IMG/VR virus record: IMGVR_UViG_3300043399_000297
Location: 62,001 to 126,000 of that record
Direction: 5' to 3' (one strand)
Length of the DNA: 64,000 nt
Shown in pieces: positions 1,657 through 62,836 of this stretch. The notes beneath the pieces were generated by a model. The model saw nothing but the letters and a program-made list of their open reading frames with translations. It did not search any database and was not told the origin of the DNA. The number at the start of each line of letters is the position of its first letter. Position 1 is the first letter of the stretch. A program made the translations under genes and the position numbers.

Positions 1657-1661
1657 AGAGA

Positions 1662-1697
1662 TATTTATTATTTACTATGTCAGAAGTAAAGTAAATA
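1662..1697. promoter_or_regulatory. Divergent pair of T4-like late promoter cores (TAAATA)
   Basis: TAAATA on - (1667-1662) and on + (1692-1697), each 5 nt before an ATG. Confidence 0.6.
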
Positions 1698-1702
1698 ATG
1701 CA

Positions 1703-2647
1703 ATGGACGACATTATTGATATTGCAGACTTAGACGTAATATACCTAAGCTATGACGAACCTCAAAAAGAAGAATTCTGGCTCAAGATTAAGAATATGGT
1801 GCCTTGGGCTGTCAGAGTAGATGGTGTTAAGGGAAGTGACGCTGCACATAAAGCAGCAGGGGAAGCATCATCTACTGAGAGATTCATTCTCATTGACGGT
1901 GACAACTTGCCCGATGAGAACTTCTTTAATTTACAATTAGACTTTACCGATAAAGACCCTAACTACAAGTTAGCGCAGTATCGTTGGAGAGCAGTCAATG
2001 CTATCAACGGGCTACGTTATGGCAACGGCGGTATGTCGTCCTGGACAAAAACTTATGTTGCCAATATGAAGACCCACGAAAGTAGTGACGGTAGTGATGC
2101 CACGACGGTTGACTTTTGTATGGATTCTTCAGATAATCTATACTGGGCAATGCACGATTGCTACTCTACTACGTATCCAAACTACACTCCCTTCCAAGCG
2201 TGGAGAGCAGGATTCCGTGAAGGTGTCAAGATGGTGCTTGATCGGGGTGCAAGGCCCAGTATAGACGATTTCAAAGAGAGAGTTGCTGGCCGCAATTTAG
2301 ATAATCTTAAAGTTTGGTTTAATGTCGGCGCAGACGCAGAGAACGGCTACTGGGCCATATATGGCGCAAGGCTCGGAACGTATATGACTATGCTTACTGA
2401 CTGGGACTATTTAGAAGTAGCGGACTTTGATACATTTGTTAAATTGTGGGAAGACCATAGATATAATTATCCTGAACAAGAAATTGAACGTCTTGGCAGA
2501 GAATTAGATAATAAATTAGGTCTCCCCGTCTGCTTACTCAGCCCGGAACAATCAAAGTTCTTCAAGCATTTTTACAACGCTGACAAACACAATCAAGGAC
2601 CATTGGTCAAGGAGATGGATGTGATTCGCCGCCTAGAGGGATGGTGA
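1703..2647 (+). CDS. GT-A-fold glycosyltransferase-like protein
   Basis: DVIYLSYDE, RVDGVKGSDAAHKAA, LIDGD (DxD) and WRAGFREGVK; start moved to the ATG at 1703 after TAAATA. Confidence 0.6.
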   Translation: MDDIIDIADLDVIYLSYDEPQKEEFWLKIKNMVPWAVRVDGVKGSDAAHKAAGEASSTERFILIDGDNLPDENFFNLQLDFTDKDPNYKLAQYRWRAVNAINGLRYGNGGMSSWTKTYVANMKTHESSDGSDATTVDFCMDSSDNLYWAMHDCYSTTYPNYTPFQAWRAGFREGVKMVLDRGARPSIDDFKERVAGRNLDNLKVWFNVGADAENGYWAIYGARLGTYMTMLTDWDYLEVADFDTFVKLWEDHRYNYPEQEIERLGRELDNKLGLPVCLLSPEQSKFFKHFYNADKHNQGPLVKEMDVIRRLEGW

Positions 2648-2648
2648 G

Positions 2649-7378: not shown

Positions 7379-8312
7379 AGCACCAGAACCCTATTTAGCG
7401 GTTACTTGGCAAGTCAACAATTTCTGCAACTTTCGTTGCAGTTATTGTAACCCTGGTAACTGGGGCGGCGCCAATCCCAACAATGGCAATCTTGCTATCT
7501 ATATCAATAATCTAAAAGACATTATCGACAAATATACTAGTATAGGATACAAGAATTTTAAGTTCTTTTTTAGTGGTGGTGAACCTACAGCTTGGCGCAA
7601 CTTTATTCCCATATGTGAGTTTCTAAAAGAATATGTAACTTGTACATTAGCAGTCAATACCAATCTAAGTAGACCAATTGAGTGGTGGCAAAAGCATTAT
7701 CATCTGTTTGATGATATCGTTGCCAGCTTTCACGTAGAGTTTACAAAGAAAGAACGATATGAGGAAAATAACATCTTCTTGTGCGATAAGGTAAATTATC
7801 TGTCAACTAAGATGCTGTTGCACGATGAAAGATTTTGGGAAGTCGTAGAGTTTGGCAACTATCTAAAAACAGTGATGCCAAACTACTTTATTGAATGGAC
7901 ACCACTGTTTGATGAGATGACAACTAATGCAGGTCCGTGGAACTATACTGACCCATTGAAAGAACAGTTCATACACGAACATACTATCGAAATTAAGCAG
8001 TCATTACCTAAACCCAACAAAGCCGCAGAAACGTCTAGTTATAATAGATATGACAATGGTGACATTTGCCCTACTAATTCTAATCAGGTTATTGTCGATG
8101 GGGACAATTTCTTCACTGGTTGGAAATGTAATGTGGGAGATAGCATTTTCATAAGCCCAAACGGAGATGTATCGTTGGCAAGCTGCGGTCAAGGTGGTAT
8201 AGTAGGGCATATATTAGAAGATATCAGTCAGGTTGGCCCAAAACAAATAATCTGTCATAAAGATCATTGTCATTGCGGAACAGATATTATCATACCTAAA
8301 TTTATCGATTAA
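7353..8312 (+). CDS. Radical SAM protein with C-terminal Cys-rich (twitch-like) domain
   Basis: CNFRCSYC, SGGEPT, C-terminal C..C..CHKDHCHCGTD. Confidence 0.88.
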   Translation: MKRNLIAIEAPEPYLAVTWQVNNFCNFRCSYCNPGNWGGANPNNGNLAIYINNLKDIIDKYTSIGYKNFKFFFSGGEPTAWRNFIPICEFLKEYVTCTLAVNTNLSRPIEWWQKHYHLFDDIVASFHVEFTKKERYEENNIFLCDKVNYLSTKMLLHDERFWEVVEFGNYLKTVMPNYFIEWTPLFDEMTTNAGPWNYTDPLKEQFIHEHTIEIKQSLPKPNKAAETSSYNRYDNGDICPTNSNQVIVDGDNFFTGWKCNVGDSIFISPNGDVSLASCGQGGIVGHILEDISQVGPKQIICHKDHCHCGTDIIIPKFID

Positions 8313-8320
8313 ATATTCAA

Positions 8321-10243
8321 ATGAGAAAAAAGATAGTAAGTTTTGTGTGTCCTAATTTTCCTCAGGGACCTAAGGAATTTAATGCATACTACCTGCCTTA
8401 TAGTCCTGGCGTGATATGGAGTTATGCCAACCAATTCGATGTAGTTAGTGATAATTTCCAGCTTGGGGAGTTTATTTGGCGCAGAGATCCTATAGAAGAA
8501 GTAGTTGAACGTCTAAAAAATCACGATATCGTGGGTCTGTCTACTTACATATGGAACAGAAGTTATATAAACGTTTTGGGTAGAGAGCTTAAAAAAGCTA
8601 ATCCCGATATCTTTATATTTACCGGCGGGCCCGAACCTCCCATTACTGATAAAAACTTCTTCAAGCGTTTCCCTTATCTTGATATTTGCGTGAAGCAAGA
8701 AGGCGAGAAAGCACTTAAGAATATTCTTGAGAGGTTTGCAACTGACAAAGATTATACTGTTATAACAGGGTTATTAGTTAATAATAACGGAGAAGTGATC
8801 AACACTGGCGAACCAGATCGCATAAGTGATTTGGATAATATCCCTAGTCCTTATTTAACAGGGATATTTGACGATTTGATGAGGAAACATCCAGACGTTA
8901 CTTGGAATGCAATTATTGAAACCAACAGGGGTTGTCCATATATGTGCACCTTTTGCGATTGGGGAAGCCTGACATATAGTAAGGTAAAGAAGTTTAACTT
9001 AGAGCGCGTATTTGATGAGCTAGAATGGGTAGGCAAGAACAACTGCGACTTCATATCAGTTACTGACGCGAATTTCGGTATCTTCGGTGAACGAGATATG
9101 CTAATAGCAGATAAATTAATTGAAATACAGAAAAAATATAATAAGCCTACTGCCTACTCATTCGCTTGGGCTAAGAACCAGAAAAAAGAAGTAGTGGAAA
9201 TTGTAAAGAAGCTTATATATGAAGGCGGAAGTAAGATTGGTCTAAATCTCAGCGTTCAGAGTATGGACGAAAATACTTTAGAAATAATCAAACGCAAGAA
9301 CCTCGAAATGAATCGAATCAAAGAAGTGTTTGAGATGTGCGAAGAAAACAATATTCCGTTATTTACTGAATTGATTTTAGGATTACCGGGCGAAACGGTA
9401 GATACTTGGAAAAATAATTTTTACAAGTTATATGAAGCTGGCAATCATACTGGTATTACTATATACCAGGCGCAGTTGCTTGAAAATGCCGAAATGAATC
9501 TAACTCAGCGTGAAGCCTATGATCTTAAGGGAACGATAGTTTATGACTATATCGCCGGTACTTATAATGAACACGAAGTAAAAGAGGGTGTGGAAGTTGT
9601 GATTTCTACCCGAGACCTGCCTACTGAGAAGATGATAGAATGTCAGGTTTTCAGTTGGTTTCAAAACACGTTTCACATTAACGGTATTACTAACTATATT
9701 GCTAGGTATTTACATAAGATTGGCATTCCGTATAATGAATTTTACGAAACATTATTTGAAGTCATTAAGAACGATGAGTACTTCAAGGAAGAAATTGAGA
9801 GAATCAAACTTCACTATTCTAATTGGAGTAAATTTGGTAAGATTGACCATACTCCGATTCAAGGTATTGAAATACACGGATGGAATCTAATACACAGTAC
9901 AATTATTAATTTGGCAAGCTTAGATAAACACGATTATATGTTTAATCTACTTGAAGAATTTTTAAACAACAACTTTGATATACCTGAGGATATACTTGAA
10001 GATTTATTAACTATACAAAAGAATTATTTTATACGGTATACTGACATTAGTAGTTACCCCAAGACTGTCAATTTGAAGTATGATATTCTTGGATATGTGC
10101 AGAATGACACCGAACTAAATGTGAATTCTACTTATATTTTCGATTTCCCGGAAGATAAAGATATGTCACTTATTCGGTTCTGTGAACAAATATATTTTGC
10201 CCGCCGCCGAAATTTCGGTAAAGCCTGGATTTCAAAAGTATGA
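8321..10243 (+). CDS. Cobalamin-binding radical SAM protein (class B methylase-like)
   Basis: N-terminal B12-binding-like domain (GLSTYIWN..GGPE), ETNRGCPYMCTFCDW, DANF, LGLPGET. Confidence 0.88.
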   Translation: MRKKIVSFVCPNFPQGPKEFNAYYLPYSPGVIWSYANQFDVVSDNFQLGEFIWRRDPIEEVVERLKNHDIVGLSTYIWNRSYINVLGRELKKANPDIFIFTGGPEPPITDKNFFKRFPYLDICVKQEGEKALKNILERFATDKDYTVITGLLVNNNGEVINTGEPDRISDLDNIPSPYLTGIFDDLMRKHPDVTWNAIIETNRGCPYMCTFCDWGSLTYSKVKKFNLERVFDELEWVGKNNCDFISVTDANFGIFGERDMLIADKLIEIQKKYNKPTAYSFAWAKNQKKEVVEIVKKLIYEGGSKIGLNLSVQSMDENTLEIIKRKNLEMNRIKEVFEMCEENNIPLFTELILGLPGETVDTWKNNFYKLYEAGNHTGITIYQAQLLENAEMNLTQREAYDLKGTIVYDYIAGTYNEHEVKEGVEVVISTRDLPTEKMIECQVFSWFQNTFHINGITNYIARYLHKIGIPYNEFYETLFEVIKNDEYFKEEIERIKLHYSNWSKFGKIDHTPIQGIEIHGWNLIHSTIINLASLDKHDYMFNLLEEFLNNNFDIPEDILEDLLTIQKNYFIRYTDISSYPKTVNLKYDILGYVQNDTELNVNSTYIFDFPEDKDMSLIRFCEQIYFARRRNFGKAWISKV

Positions 10244-21165: not shown

Positions 21166-21186
21166 ATTTAATACTTAAATACTCTT

Positions 21187-22908
21187 ATGAAACAAGCAAA
21201 AGTTGAAGTTGGTCATATGGGTAGATATTGGAACGATGATTTCAAAACTTTGCCATATGTGAAACAGGGTGTAACTAAAGAAGAAGTCGAAAACTGGGAG
21301 CGGTTGGGATATTCTGAAAATTTTGTAAAAAGCTACACTGGATCAATGTATGATCACAGTAATGTGATGCCTGAATGGATAGATAGATTTGAAAATGCGT
21401 TTGGTTTATATAAGCAATCCTACACGTTTTACTGTATGCAAACTTGTGAAATTATGCCGACGCACAGTGATCACTTCTCTACCTATTGCAAAATAAATAA
21501 CACCACGCCTGATAAAGTCTATAGGGCAATACTGATGTTAGAAGATTGGAAACCCGGCCACTATTTTGAACTCGACGGTGTTGGATATGTTAACTGGAAG
21601 GCAGGAGACTGGTTCAAATGGAGAGGAGATGTTCCGCATGCCGCAAGCAACATAGGAATAGAGCCTAGGTATACGCTACAAGTTACTGGTCTTGATTTTA
21701 GAGTCGGTCAGTTAAACAGACTGTTTTCATTTAATATACCGGACGTTGAGGAGGAGGATAATCATCCCTTACTAAAAGATATATCTAATAAGATACAAGA
21801 GTCTCATTATATGGTGTATTTAAATAACGGATATATAACTGAGCTTGATTCTATTAACCACTCTCAGGATGTTCAAGAATTATTGAATAAAGAAGGATTG
21901 CATATCTATATGTATGAACCGCTGTGTAGTTATAGAATGCAGCAGGATAATCATACTCAAGGGTTTTATTCAGAATTTGATGATATATCACCTTATGATT
22001 TGCAAGCTGAAGAACTTGATAGCATATATGTTTATGTTAGAAGAAATAATTTGAACAATGTTACTGTTCATACAGGTGATTATAATGCAGGAGATTGGTA
22101 TAAAGATTACACTGATCGAATGAATTTGATATGTGACGATTTGTTTTTGAAAACACAAAAAACAATAGTTAACATACGGGAAACACCTAGTAATGAATTC
22201 ATTTATAATTTTATATGTTTAAACTGGCGCTTTACTAAACATAGACAATTAGTTGCTACTTATCTTGCTGGGCAGTCAGGACATTTGAGTTGGCATTTCA
22301 AATCAAAGTTTGATGTACTAGGAAAAGATTTGTTTTTTGATTTAGCCGAGTGGAAAGAGAAATATCCCACAATATATCAGAGGTTAGAACAAGGATGTGA
22401 CTATATTAGTCAGCATTCACCGTTATGCCTAGACAAAAGATCAAATCGTGCAATAGAAGTGTTAGATCCTAAATATGTAGAAATGTGGCCAGATTCAAAT
22501 GAATATGAACCAGGTGTCACGCCTTCACTGTACAATCAGGTATCCAATAACTTGTCCGATTATTATTTCCACGTGTTTTTGGATGTAGTAAACGAAACTC
22601 GGTTTGCACAACCGACTGCTAACATCAGTGAGAAGACTTTCCAGCCTATGCAATATTTTAAACCCTTTGTGCTAGTTGCCCCACCTAAGTCCCTTGAATA
22701 CGTCAAATCACTCGGTTTTAAAACCTTCAGTGATTTTTGGGATGAGAGCTATGATAACGAGTTTGATCACGGGGAGAGATTAGTTAAGATTTTTCAATTA
22801 TTAGATAAGTTGTTTGCAATGTCTAATCAAGAGCAACGTGACCTTTATAATAAGATGTTGCCTGTATTGCAACATAATTTTGACAGGTATAAGGATTTTG
22901 TGTTATGA
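21187..22908 (+). CDS. Cupin/2OG-Fe(II) oxygenase-like domain fused to a glycosyltransferase-like domain
   Basis: N-terminal PTHSD..DWKPGH..PHAASN..RYTLQVTG; C-terminal LNWRFTKHR..NET..SEKTFQP..KPF..LGFKTF..DESYD. Confidence 0.65.
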   Translation: MKQAKVEVGHMGRYWNDDFKTLPYVKQGVTKEEVENWERLGYSENFVKSYTGSMYDHSNVMPEWIDRFENAFGLYKQSYTFYCMQTCEIMPTHSDHFSTYCKINNTTPDKVYRAILMLEDWKPGHYFELDGVGYVNWKAGDWFKWRGDVPHAASNIGIEPRYTLQVTGLDFRVGQLNRLFSFNIPDVEEEDNHPLLKDISNKIQESHYMVYLNNGYITELDSINHSQDVQELLNKEGLHIYMYEPLCSYRMQQDNHTQGFYSEFDDISPYDLQAEELDSIYVYVRRNNLNNVTVHTGDYNAGDWYKDYTDRMNLICDDLFLKTQKTIVNIRETPSNEFIYNFICLNWRFTKHRQLVATYLAGQSGHLSWHFKSKFDVLGKDLFFDLAEWKEKYPTIYQRLEQGCDYISQHSPLCLDKRSNRAIEVLDPKYVEMWPDSNEYEPGVTPSLYNQVSNNLSDYYFHVFLDVVNETRFAQPTANISEKTFQPMQYFKPFVLVAPPKSLEYVKSLGFKTFSDFWDESYDNEFDHGERLVKIFQLLDKLFAMSNQEQRDLYNKMLPVLQHNFDRYKDFVL

Positions 22909-24566: not shown

Positions 24567-26047
24567 GTTATCTAGGCATTAGCTGCGGCTTTCACGATGC
24601 TGCTGTCAGTGTAGTTGACAGTGTTGGCAATATCACCTTCGCCGGACATAGCGAACGTTATAGTAAGAAAAAACACGATGAAAACTTATCTGTTGATCTA
24701 GTCAAAGATGCACTAACGCATTCATATGGCTCTATGGAACTACACTATTATGAGAGACCATACATTAAGGCTATCAGGCAATGGCAAGCTGGACAAGATA
24801 TCGGGCCATTGAACGTTAAAGATATAATTGGCTCAGATGTATTAGATACTCTAAAAATGTATGATAGTAAGATTCATACACACAATCATCATCTTTGTCA
24901 CGCCGCAGCCGGCTTTCAAACAAGCCCATTCAATGATGCTACTGTAGTTGTCATTGATGCGATAGGGGAATTAGATACTATTAGTATTTGGCACGCCACT
25001 TATAATAAGAAAGGTAGAGCGAAGTATAAGAAGCTTTGGGGAAAGAAATATCCTAATTCAATAGGACTAATGTATTCAGCTATGACACAGAGAGTAGGTC
25101 TTAGACCATTAGACGAAGAATACATATTGATGGGTATGGCAGCATATGGCAAACCTAAATATTTTGATTTATTAAATGATACCTTTTTGTCTAATCCTGC
25201 GTATATTGATTTTAGGCAGAACTTGCATACAGGAGTAGATCAAAGTTTCTTGTCCGGTGCAGATGATATGGATATTGCTAGTTCTGCGCAAGCGTTGGCA
25301 GAAGTATTGATTCGAATTGTATTGTTAAAGGCGATGCATCTGGGAAGAAGTAGTAACCTAGTATATAGCGGAGGAGTAGCACTCAACTGTGCAGCCAATA
25401 GATATCTAGGAAGCTATTTCAAAAATATGTGGATTATGCCTAACCCAGGTGATGCAGGCAATAGTCTTGGTGCAGCAGCATTAGGGTACGGTAAGAAATT
25501 AAATTGGACTAATGCATTCTTGGGTTATGAAATCAAAGGCGATTATCCGGTTGACAATCTCATAAAAGAGTTGCATAGTAATAAGATCGTAGGAGTAGCT
25601 AGTGGTAGAGCAGAGTTCGGTCCAAGAGCATTGGGTAATCGTAGTCTGTTAGCAGACCCACGCGGCCCTAATATTAAGGATAAGGTTAATGAGATTAAGC
25701 GAAGACAAAAGTTCAGACCATTTGCGCCGATCGTTTTGGAGGAGTTGGTTACTGATTACTTTGATATGCCTACTGGTTGGACTGACTCTAGGTATATGCA
25801 AGTCGTCGCTATTTGTAGGCATCCTGGTTTATTTCCTGCTATCGTTCACGCTGACGGGACTAGTCGTGTTCAGACTGTTCCTAAAGATGAATCAGGAATC
25901 AGAAAGCTTTTAGAAGTTTGGTACGAACAGACCGGCTGCCCTATGCTTCTTAATACATCACTGAATATTCGCGGTGAACCCATGGTCAACGATAGAAATG
26001 ATGCTGACCGCTTTGAAAAACTCTATGGAGTAAAAGTATATTCATAA
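24563..26047 (+). CDS. O-carbamoyltransferase (NodU/CmcH/TobZ family)
   Basis: HDAA, ERYS, HHLCHA, MGMAAYG, GGVALN, PGDAG, EFGPRALGNRS, FRPFAP, NTSLN. Confidence 0.93.
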   Translation: MSYLGISCGFHDAAVSVVDSVGNITFAGHSERYSKKKHDENLSVDLVKDALTHSYGSMELHYYERPYIKAIRQWQAGQDIGPLNVKDIIGSDVLDTLKMYDSKIHTHNHHLCHAAAGFQTSPFNDATVVVIDAIGELDTISIWHATYNKKGRAKYKKLWGKKYPNSIGLMYSAMTQRVGLRPLDEEYILMGMAAYGKPKYFDLLNDTFLSNPAYIDFRQNLHTGVDQSFLSGADDMDIASSAQALAEVLIRIVLLKAMHLGRSSNLVYSGGVALNCAANRYLGSYFKNMWIMPNPGDAGNSLGAAALGYGKKLNWTNAFLGYEIKGDYPVDNLIKELHSNKIVGVASGRAEFGPRALGNRSLLADPRGPNIKDKVNEIKRRQKFRPFAPIVLEELVTDYFDMPTGWTDSRYMQVVAICRHPGLFPAIVHADGTSRVQTVPKDESGIRKLLEVWYEQTGCPMLLNTSLNIRGEPMVNDRNDADRFEKLYGVKVYS

Positions 26048-26056
26048 GTAGTTATT

Positions 26057-31055: not shown

Positions 31056-31058
31056 AGA

Positions 31059-31087: not shown

Positions 31088-31093
31088 AAGTTA

Positions 31094-31446: not shown

Positions 31447-31470
31447 TCTTTCCATACAGATAAATACAGT

Positions 31471-34010: not shown

Positions 34011-34039
34011 TTGACATTTACTCAAAATCATTGTAGTGT
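34011..34039 (+). promoter_or_regulatory. Early sigma70 promoter (leaderless arrangement)
   Basis: GGTTGACA-17-TAGTGT, then 6 nt to the ATG. Confidence 0.7.
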
Positions 34040-34045
34040 GAGAAT

Positions 34046-34318
34046 ATGACTAAGACATTCAACACCGCAGAAGAAGCTAGGTCCATAATGTATGACATTA
34101 ACACCGAGCTAGGTCGTCTCCCTTATAACCCAGACTTGAGTAAGTTTTGCTATAACATCTGCGATATGGTGACAGAACTTAGTCGCCTCGAGGTATACAC
34201 CCGTCGCACTCCTCCCCGTTCTAGATATCATATTGAATATAATAAGAAGCGCGAAACCATTCGCGATGCCATCAAGCATCTAGAGAACCTAGTCCTCATG
34301 GCTAGGTTGATGGCATAA
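34046..34318 (+). CDS. Hypothetical early protein
   Basis: 90-aa ORF directly behind a promoter. Confidence 0.7.
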   Translation: MTKTFNTAEEARSIMYDINTELGRLPYNPDLSKFCYNICDMVTELSRLEVYTRRTPPRSRYHIEYNKKRETIRDAIKHLENLVLMARLMA

Positions 34319-43176: not shown

Positions 43177-43192
43177 TATAAATAATAGTGCT

Positions 43193-43654
43193 ATGTCACT
43201 ATATTGGATCTTAACTTTTGTTCCTGAATTAGTAATTCATTTAGTTTTGGTTATTGGCCTCATTGGGTTGTTTGTAGCAGCATTTGTTCAAGCAGTGCCC
43301 TTCATTAACCAATATAAGTTTCCTATTCAAATTATAGCATTGATATTATGCTTGACCGGTGTCTATTTTGAGGGTGCATTAGGATATAAAAATAGCGTTG
43401 CCATAGAAGTGGCCGAGCTGAAACAAAAATTGGCCGAAGCAGAAGCTAAGGGTGCAAAAGTCAACACTGAAATAGTTGAAAAGATAGTCAAAGATACTCA
43501 GGTAATACGCCAAAAGGGCCAGACTATCACTGAATATGTAGACCGCGAAGTAGTCAAGCACGATCAAGATTGCACTATCCCCAAAGAAGTCATCAACGCA
43601 CACAATGCAGCAGCTACGATGGATATTAGTAAACTAGATGGAGCAACTAAGTGA
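43193..43654 (+). CDS. Putative inner-membrane spanin (Rz-like)
   Basis: N-terminal TM segments, coiled coil and C-terminal Cys; overlaps a lipoprotein gene. Confidence 0.6.
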   Translation: MSLYWILTFVPELVIHLVLVIGLIGLFVAAFVQAVPFINQYKFPIQIIALILCLTGVYFEGALGYKNSVAIEVAELKQKLAEAEAKGAKVNTEIVEKIVKDTQVIRQKGQTITEYVDREVVKHDQDCTIPKEVINAHNAAATMDISKLDGATK

Positions 43655-45307: not shown

Positions 45308-45337
45308 TGACATACTAATTACTGAATAAGTAATTTT

Positions 45338-46054
45338 ATGGACAACTTAATAGATATCAATCAAACCCTCGACCTAATCAAGCTAAAGTTTTATAATGAA
45401 TGGCTTTATACTGCCCACATTCACGATGAAGGCGAAAGTCAATTACATAAAGTTTTAAGTAAGCAAGCAATAGAAACTTATGTGGATCCCTTAAACTTAC
45501 CCAAAGACGCACATATTCTTGATCTTGGATGCGGACCTGGTTATTTCCTTGACGAAATGAAGGATAGGGGATATACCAATCTGATTGGAGTCACGTTAAG
45601 TCCAGGGGATATTAAAACTTGCGAAGACAAAGGTCACACTATTAAGAAGTATGATTTGAGCTTTTTACCACAGAAGGATGGATATTACGACGAGTCAGTA
45701 GACTTTATCTTTATTCGTCAAGCATTAGAACACAGCCCGTATCCCATTTTTAGTCTAATGGAATACAATCGTATTTTAAAACAAGGCTCTTATATTTACA
45801 TTGAAGTTCCTGCTCCCGACTGCGAGAGAGGTCACGAGTTCAATCCCAATCATTATAGTATTATGGGGTCCAATCAGTTGGGTGCATTACTAGTAAGAAC
45901 TGGATTTGATGTTATAGAATTCAATAATTTAGAGTTTGATGCACAAGGGCCGGATCCAAAAGCCGACGATCCGGCTACTGCCCCGCTAGTCTCATTTAAA
46001 GAAAAGTTCTATTGCATTTTAGCTAAAAAAGCAAGACCATTAGATATCAAGTAA
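45338..46054 (+). CDS. Class I SAM-dependent methyltransferase
   Basis: ILDLGCGPG, ALEHS, RILKQG..IEVP. Confidence 0.85.
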   Translation: MDNLIDINQTLDLIKLKFYNEWLYTAHIHDEGESQLHKVLSKQAIETYVDPLNLPKDAHILDLGCGPGYFLDEMKDRGYTNLIGVTLSPGDIKTCEDKGHTIKKYDLSFLPQKDGYYDESVDFIFIRQALEHSPYPIFSLMEYNRILKQGSYIYIEVPAPDCERGHEFNPNHYSIMGSNQLGALLVRTGFDVIEFNNLEFDAQGPDPKADDPATAPLVSFKEKFYCILAKKARPLDIK

Positions 46055-46084: not shown

Positions 46085-46125
46085 TTGTATGAAGTATGAT
46101 AAATACTTTAAAGGATTAAAGATCA

Positions 46126-46413
46126 ATGGCTTCATACATTCAAACAGCTTCTGGAAATACTGCAAGTATAGGCCCAATTGCTACTGATAAAGTTCGTATA
46201 GCTGCTATTTCATCAATTGCTGTAGCAGTAGGAAATTCCAGTGTAGCCGCTAACACGACTGCTTGTGAAGTCATCCCGTCTGGAACAGTAGAACGTAGCT
46301 TTGTCGTGGGGCAGGGCAATTATTTAGCATATATTGGAATTGGAACAGGATCACATCAACCGTTTTCTGTAACTGAATTAGGTATGCCACACGAAGATAC
46401 AGGAACTGAATAA
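46126..46413 (+). CDS. Small virion structural protein (putative)
   Basis: TAAATA at 46100, RBS, Ala/Gly/Ser/Thr-rich beta-type sequence. Confidence 0.5.
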   Translation: MASYIQTASGNTASIGPIATDKVRIAAISSIAVAVGNSSVAANTTACEVIPSGTVERSFVVGQGNYLAYIGIGTGSHQPFSVTELGMPHEDTGTE

Positions 46414-48035: not shown

Positions 48036-48053
48036 TATTAACTAAATAGTTTT

Positions 48054-49601
48054 ATGGCGAACACAGCATCATTAGTTAAGGATCCATATAAGAAAACCGT
48101 CTTCAAGAACCAAAAGGAGATTGAGGACTTTATCAAGTGTTGTGATCCAGACACTGGTTATCTATACTTTATGGATAACTTCTTTATGATTCAGCATCCC
48201 ACACAAGGTGCTATGAATTATCACCCTTGGGACTATCAAAAAAAATTAATCGAAACATATCACAAATATCGTTTTAGTATTAGTTTGATGCCTAGACAGT
48301 CAGGTAAGAGTACCTCAGCAGCAGGATATTTGCTTTGGTATGCGATGTTCGTACCTGACAGCACTATTCTAATTGCAGCACACAAGTATACCGGTGCACA
48401 AGAAATTATGCAGCGTATACGATATGCATATGAAAACTGTCCAGACCATATCAAAGCAGGGGTGACCACTTATAATAAAGGCTCGCTTGATTTTGAGAAC
48501 GGATCACGCATTGTGTCTGCAACTACTACTGAAAATACCGGTCGTGGTATGTCTATCTCATTACTATATCTTGACGAGTTCGCCTTCGTTAGACCCTCAA
48601 TCGCAACTGAATTCTGGACTTCTATCACACCAACATTAGCAACAGGTGGTAAGGCAATTATCACTTCTACTCCAAACAGTGACGAAGATCAATTTGCTCT
48701 TATTTGGAAGATGGCTAACAAAACCGAAGATGAATTTGGAAACACTACTGAGCTAGGTGTAAATGGATTCAGATCGTATCGCGCATATTGGAATGAACAG
48801 CCCGGAAGAGATGAAAAATGGGCTAGAGAAATGCGCGCCCAATTAGGTGAAGATCGCTTTAATCGTGAAATTGGTTGTGAATTCATTATCGCAGATGAAA
48901 CGTTGATCAATCCAAACACATTGTTCAAACTTGAGGGGGTAGAACCAACAGCAAGAATGGGACAAGTTCGTTGGTACAAGAAGCCCGAAAAGGGCAATTT
49001 ATATGTAGTCGGTCTTGATCCAAGTTTGGGTACGGGCGGTGACCCTGCTGCTATACAAGTATTTGAAGCTAATACAACTACACAAATCGGTGAGTGGAAA
49101 CATAATAAAACAGATATTCCTAGTCAAATTAAACTATTAGCTGAAATCTGCAAGTATATCGCAGAGTGTACCGGTGAACCAAACAGTATCTATTACTCAG
49201 TAGAAAACAATAGTATCGGTGAAGCAAGTCTTATCTCATTAAACGAGTTTGGTGAGAGCAATATTCCTGGCATATTCTTAAGCGAAAACGGAAAAAAACG
49301 TAAAGGCTTTAATACAACACAGAAGCCTAAACTTGCTGCCTGCGCAAAGTTCAAGACATTACTTGAATCAGGAAAGATGACGATTTATAGCAAGTCATTG
49401 ATAACAGAGTTAAAAGCCTTCGTAGCAAGTGCAGGTAGTTATGCAGCTAAGATAGGTGACACAGACGATTTGGTAATGGCTTCGTTATTATCTGTCAGAA
49501 TTATGCAGCAATTAGCTGACTATCACGGTGACTTAGAAAGTCATATTCGTGATCACGATGAAATCATAGCACCACTTCCATTCTTTGCCGTCATTAACTA
49601 A
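48054..49601 (+). CDS. terL: Terminase large subunit (T4 gp17-like)
   Basis: PRQSGKS, LYLDEFAF, ITSTPN, GLDPS, VENN, DDLVMA. Confidence 0.95.
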   Translation: MANTASLVKDPYKKTVFKNQKEIEDFIKCCDPDTGYLYFMDNFFMIQHPTQGAMNYHPWDYQKKLIETYHKYRFSISLMPRQSGKSTSAAGYLLWYAMFVPDSTILIAAHKYTGAQEIMQRIRYAYENCPDHIKAGVTTYNKGSLDFENGSRIVSATTTENTGRGMSISLLYLDEFAFVRPSIATEFWTSITPTLATGGKAIITSTPNSDEDQFALIWKMANKTEDEFGNTTELGVNGFRSYRAYWNEQPGRDEKWAREMRAQLGEDRFNREIGCEFIIADETLINPNTLFKLEGVEPTARMGQVRWYKKPEKGNLYVVGLDPSLGTGGDPAAIQVFEANTTTQIGEWKHNKTDIPSQIKLLAEICKYIAECTGEPNSIYYSVENNSIGEASLISLNEFGESNIPGIFLSENGKKRKGFNTTQKPKLAACAKFKTLLESGKMTIYSKSLITELKAFVASAGSYAAKIGDTDDLVMASLLSVRIMQQLADYHGDLESHIRDHDEIIAPLPFFAVIN

Positions 49602-49619
49602 TTTGGCATAAATATTGTT

Positions 49620-51431
49620 ATGGCAAAAAACGTAAAATCAATTCAGCAGGATCTATTTAACATTCTCCGTACGCGAGGATTTGATCCAGTATCCGCTAAA
49701 GTAGGCGACAAAACTGTTCCAGTACCGCAAGAAGCTGATATCATACGATTCACTTTTAAGAAAGATGGAAAATCGTATGGAGATGCGTGGGCTACTATTG
49801 ACGATGATAAAAAATTGATTGTTTATTACGATAAGGAACAGCAGGAAAGTCCCAACGAAAGAACATCGGGAATTGAATACGATGATACTTGGTATGGATT
49901 TCTTGGATTTTTAAAAGATTTTGCTCAACAGAACGTCTTGAAGTTTCAAACTGACTATCACGACAAGAAAAACTACGATTTGGCTCAAAGGAAGTATAAC
50001 GAAATGCAAGAGAAATTAGGCGAAAGCTACCATCCAATGGGACGCAAAGCAAGTTATAATGATGCTGTTCCTAATGTGAAGATCATTCTACAGCACAATC
50101 GTAGCCTTGAAGAAGGTGAAGCACGTTTTCGTAATGTAGCTCGTATCTTCTTAGAAAATATGGATGGTGAAAGATTCCTAGCTCCAACTACTCGCCCTGG
50201 CCTTGCTCGTGTATATGCTCGTCATATCGCAGAAGGCGGTGTACCAAATGATGACAAGTGGAATCATATTAAGTCAATCTGTGAAGATTATGGCAAGCTA
50301 GCTGGATTTGTTCGCGCAACAAAGAACAATCAGTTTAACGAATCAGCACAAGAGTTAGTGAATGAGGGAATCAATCATTATAATAACTTGCGTGAAACAT
50401 TACACAAGTTAACTACACATAAAGGATATCAGAACTATTTTGAAAGTTATACTCCCACACTAATGGAAGGTGATGGAGAAGATATCAGCGAAATGTTTAT
50501 GTCAAGCTCAATGGATCCGAGAATTGAAGCTGCTATGCCTATCTTATCAAGACTCAAGAAGCCAGTCACTGAAATGGAAGAAGTTGATAGTTTAGCAGAG
50601 TGGGCAGACGATATCATTAATGAGAAATTAGAACTTGATGAGATTTCGGATAAAACAAAGCTAGGATATGTATCTACGGCTACTAAAAATATCCCTCAAC
50701 TTCAGGGTAAAAAAGGTAAAATTGCTCGTGATACATATTATAACTGGCACAGTAGTGATGACGACCGTGCCGATGCTGACAAAAAGACGGCTGCATTAGA
50801 CAAGAAAATTGCAAATCGTAAGCAAGGAATCGAACGGGCTACTGGAGAAGAATCACTTGATGAAATTGATGAATCCTTGTTAGGTGCAGCCGCAATAGGC
50901 GGAGCAGCAGCAGCGTTAGGATCAAAATTAAAAGACAAGATAGCTGACCGTAAATCACAGCCTGGTCCTAGAACTGGTGATCCGCATAGAACTGGAAAAA
51001 AGCAAGTAGGTGAAATGGATAAGAGCCAGGGCTCACGCCGTGACTTTGACAACGCAAGAGGTCCGGATAAAACTGCTAAACCAATTTCACCTGAACAGAT
51101 GGTTAAGGGTGCAAAAAACAAACTGAATAAATTACTAAACAAGGCACATAAAGCAGAAAAGCTTGATGAAGTTAACAAAGAACTACAGTCATATGTTGAC
51201 CAAACACACGAATACAAGAATCAAGGCGAAGAGCTGGCGAACGCTGAAATAAATCAACCTAAACCTACTAACGAAACTCTTTCTAAAGAACAACGCAAGG
51301 TTGGTCAACTTGGTCCTACTGAAAAAATTACTAAGAAGAATCCTCTCAGAGGAAAGTTAGTGGGAGCTAACGAAAGTAAAGAATATGCTGAATTACAACT
51401 GATACTAAAATATTCTGGTCTTGATAAATAA
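49620..51431 (+). CDS. Probable head-associated/core protein with many (L/I)xE sites
   Basis: Follows the terminase, has its own TAAATA, charged C-terminal half with LDE/IDE/LGE/ANE junctions. Confidence 0.5.
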   Translation: MAKNVKSIQQDLFNILRTRGFDPVSAKVGDKTVPVPQEADIIRFTFKKDGKSYGDAWATIDDDKKLIVYYDKEQQESPNERTSGIEYDDTWYGFLGFLKDFAQQNVLKFQTDYHDKKNYDLAQRKYNEMQEKLGESYHPMGRKASYNDAVPNVKIILQHNRSLEEGEARFRNVARIFLENMDGERFLAPTTRPGLARVYARHIAEGGVPNDDKWNHIKSICEDYGKLAGFVRATKNNQFNESAQELVNEGINHYNNLRETLHKLTTHKGYQNYFESYTPTLMEGDGEDISEMFMSSSMDPRIEAAMPILSRLKKPVTEMEEVDSLAEWADDIINEKLELDEISDKTKLGYVSTATKNIPQLQGKKGKIARDTYYNWHSSDDDRADADKKTAALDKKIANRKQGIERATGEESLDEIDESLLGAAAIGGAAAALGSKLKDKIADRKSQPGPRTGDPHRTGKKQVGEMDKSQGSRRDFDNARGPDKTAKPISPEQMVKGAKNKLNKLLNKAHKAEKLDEVNKELQSYVDQTHEYKNQGEELANAEINQPKPTNETLSKEQRKVGQLGPTEKITKKNPLRGKLVGANESKEYAELQLILKYSGLDK

Positions 51432-54484: not shown

Positions 54485-54519
54485 TATGGATACATAGCGG
54501 TTCAATATAAATACATTAT

Positions 54520-55236
54520 ATGGAGCCGCTAATGTATTATGTTTATGCGTTGATTGATGTGAGAACTGAATTACCATTCTATATAGGTAAAGGTAAAGAA
54601 GGAAACAACCGCCACTTGGATCATTTTTGTGAGTCAATTGAAAACACGGATAACCGACAGAAAGTATATAAAATACAATATTTGTTGCTTGAGTTTGGTG
54701 ACGTTCCGGTATTAATATTAGATTCAGGAATAAAAAATGAAGATTCTGCTTACGACCTCGAAACATTTTTCATTAAAAAATATGGAAGAATAAACATTGA
54801 TCCAGGAGGGATACTTACTAATATTTTGATAGATAAGCGTCCCCCCAACCACACAGGCAGAAAACAGTCATTAGATCACATTAATAAGAGAATGTCAAGC
54901 AGAAAACACACTGCTGATACAATAGGCATAAAACCTTGTAGTCCTGAGTCTAACAAAAAGAAGGGCCGATCCGGTATTGAAAATGGATTCTATGGTAAAA
55001 AACACACTGAAAAAAATAAAAATGATCACTCAATGAGAATGAAGGGTAACAAAAACAATATTAAAACTTACGAGTTTACTGATCCAAAAGGAATATCACA
55101 CATTGTGGATGGGTTTTATGCTTTTTGTGAAGATAACCACTTAGTAGTACCTACACTAGAAAAGGCATTGAAAAACGGTACAGCAGTATACTCAGGAAAG
55201 TGTAAAGGATGGAAAGTCAGAAGGTTAAGTAAATGA
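54520..55236 (+). CDS. GIY-YIG homing endonuclease with NUMOD3-like repeats
   Basis: YYVYALID..PFYIGKG..R..H, E..FIKKYG..G.LTN, GRKQS, FYGKKHT; TATAAATA at 54506. Confidence 0.8.
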   Translation: MEPLMYYVYALIDVRTELPFYIGKGKEGNNRHLDHFCESIENTDNRQKVYKIQYLLLEFGDVPVLILDSGIKNEDSAYDLETFFIKKYGRINIDPGGILTNILIDKRPPNHTGRKQSLDHINKRMSSRKHTADTIGIKPCSPESNKKKGRSGIENGFYGKKHTEKNKNDHSMRMKGNKNNIKTYEFTDPKGISHIVDGFYAFCEDNHLVVPTLEKALKNGTAVYSGKCKGWKVRRLSK

Positions 55237-59770: not shown

Positions 59771-59797
59771 ACAGGGACTTCGGTCCCTGTCTTTTTT
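59771..59797 (+). terminator. Rho-independent terminator with UUCG loop
   Basis: ACAGGGAC-TTCG-GTCCCTGT-CTTTTTT. Confidence 0.88.
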
Positions 59798-59840
59798 CCA
59801 ATGTACTTGATAATTTAACTGATGGTGATATAGTATGGAT

Positions 59841-60842
59841 ATGAACAATAAGGAACAAGTATTATATTTCTTCCTTCAGGGGAAAATAAGTCTTAGCCAG
59901 TATGACTACAAGTTCATGGCCAACCTGCAAACGATGATACAGAATAAGAATCGTGTCACTACCAATCAGGCAGAATTGTTCGATCATCTTATTAGCAAGT
60001 ATAAGAAACAGCTTACTAAGAATGGGTATGACAAGGACACATTGAAGTCTCTTTCTTGGAAGACTATGGTTGTAGAAAGCACCAGTGATTACACTGGAGC
60101 TACCGTCTCTATGCTCAATGACGATATCATTATTCGTGTGCCATTCAACAAGGGCTTCATTACTGCTTTCAGAAATAGTGTGTTCAACAACCCATATGAT
60201 TGGAACAATGAGTTAAAGTTGTATAAGGCTAAGTTTTCAACTACTGCGTTGAAAATTGCTGCCACCTTTTTACCGCACTATTTCTCTACAGTGAAGTATT
60301 GTGACGAAATTGAAAAGATATTGAATGATCTAGAAAACTTTAACGCTAAGGTATATAACCCAACACTGTTCAACATAAATGATAGGTTGGTAGTAGGAGC
60401 CTGCAACTATGTGTTAGGCGAGATAGTTCAAAATATGAACCTTAACCTAGACGCCAAAACATTGTTCAAAATGTCACAATTAGGCATCACTGTTGATGAA
60501 TCTGTATACAAGAATGATCCTAGACTAGAGTTTGCAAGCAAGCGTGTCTATGAAGCGGAGATCACACAACTAGAAACTGTGTTATCTTATATGAAGGATG
60601 TTGGCTGCGGTAATGTCATCATTGGTCGTGGATTGAGAAATATTCTTAATCAAAATGCGATAGACGAACTAATTGCAATGCGAGGTATGCAGCCTATGGG
60701 ACCTATGAGTTTTGGAACTCTACCTGATGGCGTCAACATACTTATACAGCATACTACTAGCGTAGATGTTACCAAAGCTTTCTCTGGTAAGCTAAGTAAA
60801 ATTGTCGTGCTAAAAGATAGCCGACCTATTGAGGTTAAATGA
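59841..60842 (+). CDS. Hypothetical protein upstream of uvsW
   Basis: Long ORF; TTGATA-16-TATAGT-6 nt-ATG favours a start at 59841 over 59835. Confidence 0.65.
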   Translation: MNNKEQVLYFFLQGKISLSQYDYKFMANLQTMIQNKNRVTTNQAELFDHLISKYKKQLTKNGYDKDTLKSLSWKTMVVESTSDYTGATVSMLNDDIIIRVPFNKGFITAFRNSVFNNPYDWNNELKLYKAKFSTTALKIAATFLPHYFSTVKYCDEIEKILNDLENFNAKVYNPTLFNINDRLVVGACNYVLGEIVQNMNLNLDAKTLFKMSQLGITVDESVYKNDPRLEFASKRVYEAEITQLETVLSYMKDVGCGNVIIGRGLRNILNQNAIDELIAMRGMQPMGPMSFGTLPDGVNILIQHTTSVDVTKAFSGKLSKIVVLKDSRPIEVK

Positions 60843-62296
60843 ACGAAGCAAAAATAATCATCAAGGATGAAGTTAATGTGCGAATTGAAAATTTGTCATT
60901 AGTTGATCGTAAAACATTGAATAATAAATTCTCCTACGAAAAGCCCGGTGCAAGATATTTGCCCTCGGTTCGTTTAGGTCGTTGGAATGGCAAGATAAGC
61001 TATTTCTCATTAGCCGGCAGCACCTATTTGAACTTGCTGGAAGATGTTATAACATATCTTTATGATAAAAATTATGACATTGAACTAGTAGATAACAGAC
61101 AGAATCACGGTAATATAACGTTTGAACCTATCAAAGAAGATAGTTTCAGTGACAAGGTCTGGCCAGACAAGCATCCCAATGCCGGCGAACCTATTATGTT
61201 ACGAGACTATCAGGTTGAGATTGTAAATAACTTCCTATCCAACCCTCAGAGCTTGCAGGAAGTCGCTACGGGGGCAGGCAAGACACTGATGACTGCTGCT
61301 CTATCTAAGAGTGTAGAGCATCTAGGACGCTCTATAGTGATCGTCCCCAACAAGAGTCTAGTTGTGCAGACAGAAGCAGACTACATTAACTTAGGATTGG
61401 ACGTAGGGGTTTATTTCGGTGATCGTAAGGAGTATGGAAAGACTCATACTATCTGCACTTGGCAATCATTGAATAACCTATTCAAGAATGTTGCTGACGC
61501 CGGAGAAGACGCCGAGCTAGCAGAATTCTTCTTTGACGGTGTTGTCTGTGTTATGGTTGACGAAGTGCATATGGCTAAGGCTGATGTTCTCAAGACAATG
61601 CTAACTGGCGTGTTCAGTGATATTCCTATTCGCTGGGGATTGACCGGAACGATTCCTAAAGCTGAAATGGACCGTGTATCCTTGCTTGTTTCACTTGGTC
61701 CTGTTATAGGGCAGTTGTCTGCTAGTGAACTACAAGATAGAGGTGTATTAGCTAACTGCCACGTTAATATCATTCAGATGAAAGATAATAAAGAGTTTGC
61801 TAATTACCAAAGCGAATTGAAGCATCTACTTGAAGACGAAGCTAGACTAGATAGGATAGCTGAATTAATTACAAAGGTCAATGAGACTGGAAATACATTG
61901 GTGCTTGTTGATAGAGTCAACGCAGGCAAAGAGTTGGTAAGTAGACTGAATAACGCAGTGTTTGTTAATGGTTCTGTTAAGGTTAAGGATAGACTAGAAG
62001 AATATGATGAGGTTGCAATAAGCGATGACAAGATTATCGTGGCCACGTATGGTGTTGCAGCAGTAGGCATTAATATTCCTAGAATTTTCAATCTTGTTCT
62101 TATTGAGCCTGGTAAGAGCTTTGTTCGTGTTATTCAGTCAATAGGTAGAGGCATTCGTAAAGCAGAGGATAAGGACCACGTGGAAATCTGGGATATCACA
62201 AGCACTTGTAAGTTTGCAAAACGACATTTGACTCAGCGCAAACAATTCTACAAAGAAGCTAATTATCCCTTCAGTTTGGAGAAATTAGATTATTAA
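60839..62296 (+). CDS. uvsW: SF2 DNA helicase UvsW
   Basis: LRDYQ, ATGAGKT, DEVH, GLTGT, GINIP, QSIGRGIR. Confidence 0.92.
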   Translation: MNEAKIIIKDEVNVRIENLSLVDRKTLNNKFSYEKPGARYLPSVRLGRWNGKISYFSLAGSTYLNLLEDVITYLYDKNYDIELVDNRQNHGNITFEPIKEDSFSDKVWPDKHPNAGEPIMLRDYQVEIVNNFLSNPQSLQEVATGAGKTLMTAALSKSVEHLGRSIVIVPNKSLVVQTEADYINLGLDVGVYFGDRKEYGKTHTICTWQSLNNLFKNVADAGEDAELAEFFFDGVVCVMVDEVHMAKADVLKTMLTGVFSDIPIRWGLTGTIPKAEMDRVSLLVSLGPVIGQLSASELQDRGVLANCHVNIIQMKDNKEFANYQSELKHLLEDEARLDRIAELITKVNETGNTLVLVDRVNAGKELVSRLNNAVFVNGSVKVKDRLEEYDEVAISDDKIIVATYGVAAVGINIPRIFNLVLIEPGKSFVRVIQSIGRGIRKAEDKDHVEIWDITSTCKFAKRHLTQRKQFYKEANYPFSLEKLDY

Positions 62297-62335
62297 TTTC
62301 TTGACTTGTTATAATATTGTTGCTATGATACTAAT

Positions 62336-62836
62336 ATGCGAATACTAACATTAGAAAATACAAATTATAACCTAGAGACACTTCCTGAGGAAATTGATGA
62401 CCTTAGGTTTGCTATTCTAGATAACTCTACTCCTTCAAATGTAGACTATCATTTTATTCCATTGATCTTTTTGGAATCATTTAATAGTCCTGCACTTGTA
62501 TTGAAAATAGCAAATAAAATTATCAAGATGCCTATTGATTGGCAAGTATTGATAGGAGAGCAAGAACACGGTGATTTAGAATCATTGCCACTATCAAGTC
62601 TTAATGACAGAGGGTTTAATGTTTTTGAGTTTAATCCACTAACTTCGTATGCTCCGGGATTTCTACCTATTGAGATACTAGACATATATCCAGAAGTAAC
62701 TTGGTATGCACCTAGATTAAAGAATGGACAATTTTTAGCCGTACCTATAGATGAAGGAGAAAAGCCAAGATGCGTTTACTTTGTTAAAGAAGTCAGTAGA
62801 AATTGTGAAGTAGTTGACTATAGCCAAGTATATTAA
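62336..62836 (+). CDS. Hypothetical beta-rich protein
   Basis: Promoter TTGACT-17-TATGAT-6 nt-ATG (62301-62329). Confidence 0.7.
   Translation: MRILTLENTNYNLETLPEEIDDLRFAILDNSTPSNVDYHFIPLIFLESFNSPALVLKIANKIIKMPIDWQVLIGEQEHGDLESLPLSSLNDRGFNVFEFNPLTSYAPGFLPIEILDIYPEVTWYAPRLKNGQFLAVPIDEGEKPRCVYFVKEVSRNCEVVDYSQVY

What the first reader, a model, noticed from the sequence alone, without database searches (positions are those of the whole stretch)
1657..62336. Pervasive leaderless gene architecture for late and some early promoters
Seen: TAAATA/TAAGTA lies 4-8 nt (mostly 5) before the ATG, leaving no room for an SD, at genes 1656(-), 1703, 8321, 21187, 26057, 31471, 43193, 45338, 48054, 49620 and 54520. 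Sigma70 -10 boxes lie 6 nt before the ATG at 34046, 59841 and 62336. Known: T4 late transcripts start a few nt after TATAAATA, and alphaproteobacteria translate many leaderless mRNAs. Inference: much of the late programme, including terminase, uses leaderless initiation, which could bypass shut-off of SD-led translation.
Basis: partly seen in the sequence, partly recalled or inferred. Interest (0 to 1): 0.65.

Follow-up and report, generated by a model that had tools for sequence, protein, structure and literature searches.

The report
Promoters fused to start codons
In this uncultured freshwater jumbo phage, about one gene in eight has a promoter element placed so close to its ATG that the mRNA should begin at the start codon, with no ribosome-binding site; hundreds of related phages keep this layout, but no RNA data exist to prove it.

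Summary
All 14 quoted sites exist as described.

- **Spacing.** Across the 244-kb contig, the distance from TAAATA to the start codon has two peaks: 18 genes at 4-6 nt and 30 genes at 16-25 nt, with almost nothing between. Shuffles give 1.4±1.1 at 4-6 nt.
- **No SD in the close class.** These genes lack a Shine-Dalgarno (SD) sequence and always start with ATG. The far class has an SD between motif and ATG.
- **Geometry fits T4.** The phage encodes a gp55-like late sigma factor. By the T4 rule (TATAAATA at -13 to -6), a 5-nt spacer puts the A of ATG at +1.
- **Second promoter class.** Six σ70-type promoters (TTGACA-N17-TAnnnT) sit 6-7 nt before an ATG.
- **Conservation.** In IMG/VR relatives the flanks diverge but the geometry holds: terminase 60 of 64 distinct upstream sequences, the 62336 gene 32 of 34. 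Terminators often lie directly upstream.
- **Clade-specific.** Cultured relatives PA5oct and Atu_ph07 use the same late motif but with leaders and SD.

Leaderless expression is therefore well supported by inference, though no transcription start site (TSS) was measured. The "bypass of SD shut-off" idea is not supported, because the major capsid gene is strongly SD-led. This is a new variant of a known kind.

The parts
1654..1667 (-). TAAATA-N5-ATG of a FabG-like short-chain dehydrogenase gene (922-1656). It is one half of a back-to-back promoter pair in a 46-nt divergent intergenic region.
1692..1705 (+). TAAATA-N5-ATG of gene 1703-2647. In-frame ATGs at 1565 and 1577 exist but overlap the divergent gene.
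8310..8323 (+). TAAATA-N5-ATG of a radical-SAM/B12-binding protein gene. The TAA is also the stop codon of the upstream gene.
21176..21189 (+). TAAATA-N5-ATG of a 573-aa gene of unknown function.
26045..26059 (+). TAAGTA-N6-ATG of a 1515-aa gene. This is the weakest late site: it has the variant motif, and its TAA is the upstream stop codon.
31055..31449 (+). Permuted (two-piece) alphaproteobacterial-type tmRNA, lying directly upstream of the 31471 promoter.
31461..31473 (+). GATAAATA-N4-ATG of an 842-aa gene (DUF5661). There is no same-strand gene for 405 nt upstream.
34011..34048 (+). σ70-type promoter TTGACA-N17-TAGTGT-N6-ATG of a 90-aa gene. The geometry is the same in all 6 relatives found.
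43177..43195 (+). Perfect TATAAATA-N8-ATG of a 153-aa gene, which predicts a leader of about 2-3 nt. Relatives have N8 (14 distinct sequences) or N5 (11).
45327..45340 (+). TAAGTA-N5-ATG of a methyltransferase gene. Relatives keep TAAGTA: it is leaderless in 8 distinct upstream sequences (2 more carry TAAATA-N5) and followed by a leader with AGGA in 39.
48043..48056 (+). CTAAATA-N5-ATG of the terminase large subunit gene (48054-49601).
49609..49622 (+). ATAAATA-N5-ATG of a 603-aa virion structural protein gene. Of 59 distinct relative sequences, 51 have TAAATA at N4-6.
54506..54522 (+). TATAAATA-N6-ATG of a GIY-YIG homing-endonuclease-like gene. This site is ambiguous, because the ATG at 54532 is preceded by GGAG.
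59771..59843 (+). Intrinsic terminator hairpin plus T-run (59771-59799), then TTGATA-N16-(TG)ATATAGT-N6-ATG of gene 59841-60842.
62301..62338 (+). σ70-type promoter TTGACT-N17-TATGAT-N6-ATG of a 166-aa gene (phrog_11279).
46100..46128 (+). Contrast case: the same late motif (GATAAATAC) followed by a 20-nt spacer holding an SD (AAAGGA) before the ATG at 46126. Other examples: 43938-43968, 51425-51458, 37975-38007.

Best explanation
The phage uses two promoter classes: a T4-type late promoter ((A)TAAATA(C), read by its own gp55-like sigma factor) and host σ70-type promoters (TTGACA-N17-(TGn)TAnnAT).

For a subset of genes, the -10-like element sits exactly one discriminator length (4-6 nt or 6-7 nt) before the ATG. 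RNA polymerase should then start at the A of the start codon. The resulting leaderless mRNA would be translated without an SD, presumably by direct binding of 70S ribosomes to the 5'-terminal AUG.

The other promoter-proximal genes carry spacers of about 16-30 nt with a normal SD. Spacers of intermediate length, which would work in neither mode, are avoided.

What is shown: the sequence geometry, its statistics, its conservation and the presence of the late sigma factor. What is inferred: the TSS position and the mode of translation.

Because σ70-type, probably early or middle, genes are built the same way, the unknown host's ribosomes must handle leaderless mRNAs unaided. The trait therefore most likely reflects host translation biology. 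It may also set expression levels gene by gene.
For: 1. **Two-peaked spacing.** TAAATA-to-start spacing gives 18 genes at 4-6 nt, 5 at 7-15 nt and 30 at 16-25 nt. Across 594 distinct ORF starts in relatives the counts are 152 at 4-8 nt, 3 at 9-17 nt and 47 at 21-25 nt.
2. **SD content.** The close class lacks an SD while the far class has one between motif and ATG. Both classes share the consensus (g)ATAAATAc.tT and have no -35.
3. **T4 geometry.** T4's TATAAATA spans -13 to -6 (PMC2988020), so an N5 spacer places the A of ATG at +1. The base before the ATG is T in 15 of the 18 TAAATA N4-6 sites.
4. **Late sigma factor.** A gp55-like gene lies at G000:C1:21214-22065 (phrog_12791, E = 1.7e-72; phrog_234, E = 1.8e-22).
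5. **Conservation of late sites.** Terminase has 64 distinct upstream sequences, 60 with TAAATA at N4-6, while the flanks diverge. Two exceptions instead carry a leader with an SD-like stretch. The 49620 orthologue keeps N4-6 in 51 of 59.
6. **Terminators.** Intrinsic terminators lie directly upstream of TAAATA in several relatives and at two sites of this contig outside the window. One also precedes the 59807 promoter. This leaves no room for any other promoter or leader.
7. **σ70 class.** Six sites have N6-7 and the rest have spacers of at least 10 nt. Geometry is conserved in 32 of 34 (62336), 22 of 27 (59841) and 6 of 6 (34046) distinct relatives.
8. **Start codon.** All 17 such starts here are ATG and 139 of 143 in relatives, against about 27% non-ATG at SD-led starts (Fisher p = 0.013). 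This matches the experimental rules for leaderless mRNAs in Caulobacter: AUG is required and short leaders inhibit (PMC8459731).
9. **True N-termini.** Family profiles align from residues 1-10 of the predicted proteins.
Against: - No TSS or ribosome data exist. Only two DNA metagenome runs hold this sequence.
- Start-site selection by this gp55-like holoenzyme is assumed from T4.
- N4 and N8 spacers imply flexible start sites or 1-3-nt leaders.
- Many close-class genes lie 1-25 nt behind a same-strand gene, so read-through transcripts with coupled translation could also express them. In 3 of 22, the TAA is the upstream stop codon.
- Two close-class genes (42121 and window 124930) have SD-like runs further upstream, and 54520 has an alternative SD-led start.
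- The 5' ends are only weakly less structured than in other genes (p = 0.03-0.10).
- gp33 and gp45 homologues were not detected. The contig is estimated to be about 71% complete.
Confidence: 0.75

Rival explanations
1. The genes are expressed from polycistronic read-through transcripts and translated by termination-reinitiation (coupling) without an SD. On this view TAAATA near the ATG is just a TAA stop codon plus AT-rich intergenic sequence.
For: Most close-class genes lie 1-25 nt after a same-strand gene. In 8321, 26057 and window 178779 the TAA is the upstream stop codon.
Against: - Only 3 of 22 motifs use the TAA as a stop codon.
- Seven of 22 have no same-strand gene within 50 nt.
- The full hexamer and the exact spacing are conserved in relatives while the position of the upstream stop varies.
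- Terminators sit between the upstream gene and the motif in several relatives.
- The same motif occurs 16-25 nt upstream of SD-led genes.
- The σ70-type cases carry complete -35/-10 promoters.
Confidence: 0.1
2. TAAATA at -11 to -6 is a non-SD ribosome-binding or A/U-rich translation enhancer on leadered mRNAs (GeneMarkS-2 'group B' style), not a promoter.
For: A/U-rich elements can aid initiation, and the motif occupies the place where an SD would sit.
Against: - The same motif with the same flanks occurs at 16-25 nt followed by a real SD.
- The phage encodes a gp55-like sigma factor whose T4 homologue reads TATAAATA.
- The motif was already predicted as the late promoter in relatives CBB and GAP32 (PMC5259590).
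- Terminators directly upstream leave no other promoter.
- σ70-type promoters show the same fused geometry.
Confidence: 0.07
3. Start-codon misassignment: the true starts lie downstream or upstream with ordinary SDs, and the TAAATA-ATG juxtapositions come from choosing the first ATG.
For: 54520 has an ATG four codons downstream with GGAG. 1703 and 42121 have other in-frame candidates. Starts came from a simple home-made caller.
Against: - For most sites the ATG is the first start after an in-frame stop 9-45 nt upstream, and the next candidate is more than 24 nt away without an SD.
- Protein similarity to relatives starts at residue 1, and similarity ends exactly at the ATG.
- Profile matches begin at residues 1-10.
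- The enrichment is also seen without gene calls.
Confidence: 0.05

Closest known systems
Thermus phages phiYS40 and Lalka27a (mostly leaderless middle and late transcripts)
   Same: These are large lytic phages whose mapped transcripts mostly begin at the A or G of the start codon, from promoters with a distinctive -10 element and no -35 (bioRxiv 10.64898/2026.04.20.719267).
   Different: - Their host phylum (Deinococcus-Thermus) is known to favour leaderless mRNAs.
- Their late -10 element is TAGGGT, not the T4-type TAAATA, and is not known to depend on gp55.
- Their TSSs were measured. Here only sequence inference exists, and only about a third of late promoters are of this type.
T4-type late promoters (TATAAATA, gp55/gp33/gp45) and the predicted ATAAATA late promoters of Rak2-like jumbo phages (CBB, GAP32)
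   Same: The motif is the same, there is no -35, the downstream spacer is AT-rich, and a gp55-like sigma factor is encoded.
   Different: - No report of the motif fused to the start codon was found in the held library.
- In the stretches of relatives PA5oct and Atu_ph07 examined, the motif is followed by a leader with SD. None of about 77 annotated starts there has TAAATA at N4-6.
- Here 22 genes have the motif 4-8 nt before the ATG.
GeneMarkS-2 'group C' genomes (Pribnow box 6-8 nt before the gene start; Actinobacteria, Deinococcus-Thermus)
   Same: The sequence signature is the same, and so is the mix of leaderless first genes with SD-led other genes (PMC6028130).
   Different: - This is a phage genome with two promoter classes showing the signature.
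- Its relatives infect Proteobacteria, where group C is rare (5.6%).
Leaderless mRNAs of Caulobacter crescentus and classic phage cases such as lambda cI (the latter from my own knowledge)
   Same: A 5'-terminal AUG is required, short leaders inhibit, and AUG is strongly preferred (PMC8459731). All three rules are mirrored in the sequence statistics here.
   Different: Those were shown experimentally. Here the host is unknown and nothing has been measured.

Membership tests
T4-type (gp55-dependent) late promoter | -10-like TATAAATA-type element without a conserved -35 element | tested here: met
   Consensus (g)ATAAATAc, with no information content upstream, in 18 close-spaced and 33 far-spaced sites. 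The T4 definition is from PMC2988020.
T4-type (gp55-dependent) late promoter | Phage-encoded gp55-like sigma factor | tested here: met
   G000:C1:21214-22065 (-): phrog_12791 E = 1.7e-72 and phrog_234 E = 1.8e-22.
T4-type (gp55-dependent) late promoter | gp33 co-activator and gp45 sliding clamp | tested here: inconclusive
   No match to PF16805 or PF02916. The contig is about 71% complete and these proteins diverge fast. CBB also lacked detectable homologues.
T4-type (gp55-dependent) late promoter | Late timing and a TSS about 6 nt after the motif | not testable with these tools
   No RNA run holds this sequence.
Leaderless mRNA | Transcription starts at, or within about 3 nt of, the start codon | not testable with these tools
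   Inferred only from promoter geometry. No 5'-end data exist.
Leaderless mRNA | No SD upstream of the start codon | tested here: met
   Median anti-SD duplex energy +0.2 against -5.6 and -4.35 kcal/mol, p = 2.4e-7.
Leaderless mRNA | Strong preference for AUG and avoidance of short leaders | tested here: met
   17 of 17 starts here and 139 of 143 in relatives are ATG. There is a gap at spacings 7-15 nt here and 9-17 nt in relatives.
Leaderless mRNA | Unstructured 5' end | tested here: inconclusive
   Minimum folding energy of the first 30 nt is -0.98 against -1.76 (p = 0.10); for the first 45 nt, p = 0.03.
σ70-type promoter | -35 TTGACA, 16-18-nt spacer, -10 TAnnnT (often with TGn), conserved across relatives | tested here: met

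The most novel reading that the evidence does not exclude
An abundant clade of uncultured freshwater jumbo phages has turned about a third of its gp55-type late promoters, and a similar share of its σ70-type promoters, into promoter-start-codon fusions. This would create a leaderless 'translational regulon' running alongside SD-led genes. The phage could use the two initiation modes to set protein stoichiometry or timing, for example enzymes such as terminase against the capsid protein. The layout would also mark a host, possibly a low-GC alphaproteobacterium, whose ribosomes are unusually good at leaderless initiation.
Probability: 0.2. Interest if true: 0.75.

Novelty: new variant of a known kind. 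Interest (0 to 1): 0.55.

Why it matters
- **Transcription.** If confirmed, it shows that T4-type late promoters can drive leaderless mRNAs. That combination is absent from the stretches of cultured relatives examined and from the literature I could search.
- **Evolution.** The leadered or leaderless state of a gene can flip within a phage clade: the methyltransferase is leaderless in 10 distinct relatives and leadered in 39.
- **Annotation.** Gene callers that expect an SD will misplace these starts.
- **Host clue.** The host ribosomes must be competent for leaderless initiation, which narrows the search for the host of a very abundant lake phage group (more than 600 IMG/VR hits).
- **Testability.** Each site gives a compact, testable promoter-start-codon unit.

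Tried and rejected
- **Phage factors that might shift translation mode.** No ribosomal protein S21 and no IF3 were found on the contig.
- **gp33 and gp45.** No Pfam match. This is inconclusive on a contig that is about 71% complete.
- **Ancestral trait?** I checked whether cultured relatives share the trait. The PA5oct terminase region and 45 kb of Atu_ph07 have the late motif, but always with a leader and SD. The trait is therefore clade-specific, and a simple 'alphaproteobacterial host explains it' reading is weakened.
- **5' structure.** The difference is small and gives only weak support.
- **Stop-codon artefact.** This explains only 3 of 22 sites.
- **Literature.** No paper in the held library links the ATAAATA late promoter with leaderless mRNAs. 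The PA5oct omics paper does not mention leaderless transcripts.
- **Host identity.** It could not be settled.


Full report
**What the window is.** The window is bases 62001-126000 of a single 244,022-bp viral contig. The contig has 38.8% GC and CheckV estimates it to be about 71% complete. It comes from a freshwater metagenome: only two DNA runs from one sample hold it, and no RNA run does. Its proteins are most similar to jumbo myoviruses of the PA5oct / Atu_ph07 / Rak2-GAP32 group. An ssb-like protein is about 49% identical to that of PA5oct, and the terminase DNA is about 66% identical.

**Check of the observation.** Counting without any gene model, TAAATA is followed by ATG at a 5-nt spacing 17 times among 229 occurrences, against about 4-5 at neighbouring spacings. 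Control hexamers of the same composition show no such peak.

I called 240 genes on the contig with a codon-usage ORF caller, covering 95% of the sequence. With these genes:
- TAAATA ends 4-6 nt before 18 starts. 1000 dinucleotide shuffles give 1.4±1.1, maximum 6.
- TAAATA is the single commonest hexamer in that position, ahead of GGAGAA.

**The key pattern: two peaks.** The spacing from TAAATA to the start codon has 18 genes at 4-6 nt, 5 across 7-15 nt, and 30 at 16-25 nt.

I split the genes by spacing. The close class holds 22 genes with TAA(A/G)TA at 4-8 nt. It has essentially no SD: median duplex energy with the anti-SD is +0.2 kcal/mol. The far class holds 36 genes with the motif at 12-30 nt. 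It has an SD between motif and ATG (median -5.6). The remaining genes have a median of -4.35 (Mann-Whitney p = 2.4e-7).

Both classes share the extended consensus (g)ATAAATAc.tT and lack any -35 signal, so they are one promoter type. The same two peaks are stronger in 80 related loci. Of 594 distinct ORF starts, 152 have TAAATA at 4-8 nt, 3 at 9-17 nt and 47 at 21-25 nt.

**Why this reads as a promoter fused to the start codon.**
- The contig encodes a gp55-like late sigma factor.
- ATAAATA was already predicted as the late promoter of relatives CBB and GAP32 (PMC5259590).
- In T4 the TATAAATA box spans -13 to -6 (PMC2988020). A 5-nt spacer therefore puts the A of ATG at +1.
- The spacers are T-rich, and the base before the ATG is T in 15 of the 18 TAAATA N4-6 sites, the usual pyrimidine(-1)/purine(+1) start context.
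- Avoidance of intermediate spacings matches experiments in Caulobacter, where each extra 5' nucleotide roughly halves leaderless translation and AUG is strongly preferred (PMC8459731).
- All 17 such starts here are ATG, and 139 of 143 in relatives. My estimate for SD-led starts is about 27% GTG/TTG (Fisher p = 0.013).

**Comparative evidence for late sites.** More than 600 IMG/VR stretches encode a terminase at least 82% identical to this one. Among the 80 fetched loci there are 64 distinct upstream sequences, and 60 keep TAAATA at N4-6 (32 at N5, 24 at N6, 4 at N4). Meanwhile the surrounding sequence is largely unalignable.

In several relatives a hairpin plus T-run terminator sits directly before the motif. 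The same occurs at two sites of this contig outside the window, at window coordinates 76531 and 88306. This leaves no room for another promoter or for a leader.

Two natural exceptions (L004, L055) instead have a roughly 20-nt spacer with an SD-like stretch. Other genes in the same loci behave as follows:
- The gene after terminase (49620) keeps N4-6 in 51 of 59 distinct relatives.
- 43193 has N8 or N5.
- The methyltransferase 45338 keeps its TAAGTA variant, but it is leaderless in 8 distinct sequences (plus 2 with TAAATA) and leadered with AGGA in 39.

**σ70-type sites.** A strict scan (TTGACN-N16-18-TAnnnT) finds five promoters exactly 6 nt, and one 7 nt, before the ATG of an ORF. All other promoter-to-gene spacers are 10 nt or more; those at gene starts are 25-35 nt and several carry an SD.

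Three of the six leaderless-type genes encode DNA-metabolism functions, which fits early or middle expression: a dNMP kinase, a Pol III alpha-like fragment and a UvdE-like endonuclease. Profile matches start at residues 1-10.

The geometry is conserved in relatives. The 62336 gene keeps it in 32 of 34 distinct sequences, 30 with an extended TGn -10. 59841 keeps it in 22 of 27, and 34046 in 6 of 6. The 59807 promoter is itself preceded by a terminator at 59771-59799.

**What is not supported.**
- The gp23-like major capsid gene (G000:C1:2032-3195, minus strand) has AGGAG (-7.3 kcal/mol). It lies in a run of SD-led minus-strand genes downstream of a leadered late promoter, and many other late genes are SD-led.
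- No S21 or IF3 gene was found.

The 'alphaproteobacteria' link rests on a real feature: a permuted alpha-type tmRNA at 31055-31449 (RF01849 83 bits, RF04321 93.5 bits). However, Atu_ph07, which infects Agrobacterium, shows only leadered late promoters in 45 kb. So does the PA5oct terminase region. The trait is specific to this freshwater clade, and the host remains unknown.

**Weak points.**
- No TSS was measured.
- Gene starts are my own calls.
- 26057 (variant motif, and its TAA is a stop codon), 54520 (alternative SD-led ATG at 54532), 1703 and 42121 are uncertain individually.
- Three of 22 motifs double as stop codons.
- Many of these genes could also be reached by read-through transcripts.
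- gp33 and gp45 were not found.

**Comparison with what is known.** Leaderless mRNAs and their sequence signature (a Pribnow box 6-8 nt before the start) are well known in Actinobacteria and Deinococcus-Thermus (PMC6028130). Largely leaderless phage transcriptomes were mapped in Thermus phages phiYS40 and Lalka27a. I found no report that links the T4-type ATAAATA late promoter with leaderless mRNAs.

I therefore rate this a new variant of a known kind. It is well supported by sequence statistics and conservation, and it awaits 5'-end mapping.

Noticed in passing
window 31055-31449 (+): A permuted (two-piece) alphaproteobacterial-type tmRNA is encoded by the phage, with tag peptide ANDNDFAFELALAA. 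It ends about 10 nt before the leaderless-type promoter of gene 31471.
   Followed up: partly
G000:C1:34949 onward (outside the window, window coordinate -27051): An ORF of 6752 aa starts with TAAATA-N6-ATG. ARAGORN also calls a tRNA-Phe on the opposite strand at 34946-35027, overlapping this start; I did not check that call.
   Followed up: no
window ~52095-52136, upstream of 52137 (ssb-like gene): A box TTAGGCACATTT just upstream of the SD recurs in the relatives' upstream sequences shown, out of 38 distinct. It could be a middle promoter or a translational operator.
   Followed up: no
L-series relatives upstream of the 46413 orthologue; Atu_ph07 locus L165 upstream of gp110 (locus 26740, minus strand): A late motif is followed by a stable hairpin and a U-run that ends directly at an ATG, with no SD. 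This is a third start-region layout, of unknown meaning.
   Followed up: no
window 45327-45340 and relatives: The methyltransferase gene keeps the TAAGTA promoter variant. It is leaderless in some relatives and leadered with AGGA in most, an evolutionary switch between initiation modes.
   Followed up: partly
window 54520-55236 and 35867-37177: Homing-endonuclease-like genes sit among the structural and replication genes: a GIY-YIG type at 54520 and an HNH type at 35867.
   Followed up: no
IMG/VR loci L004-L164: The clade is very abundant in metagenomes. More than 600 stretches have a terminase at least 82% identical, and contigs reach 524 kb, so this 244-kb contig is probably a fragment of a larger genome.
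   Followed up: partly
window 922-1656 (-) and 8321-10243 (+): Two metabolic-type genes (a FabG-like short-chain dehydrogenase and a radical-SAM/B12-binding protein) sit behind late-type leaderless promoters.
   Followed up: no
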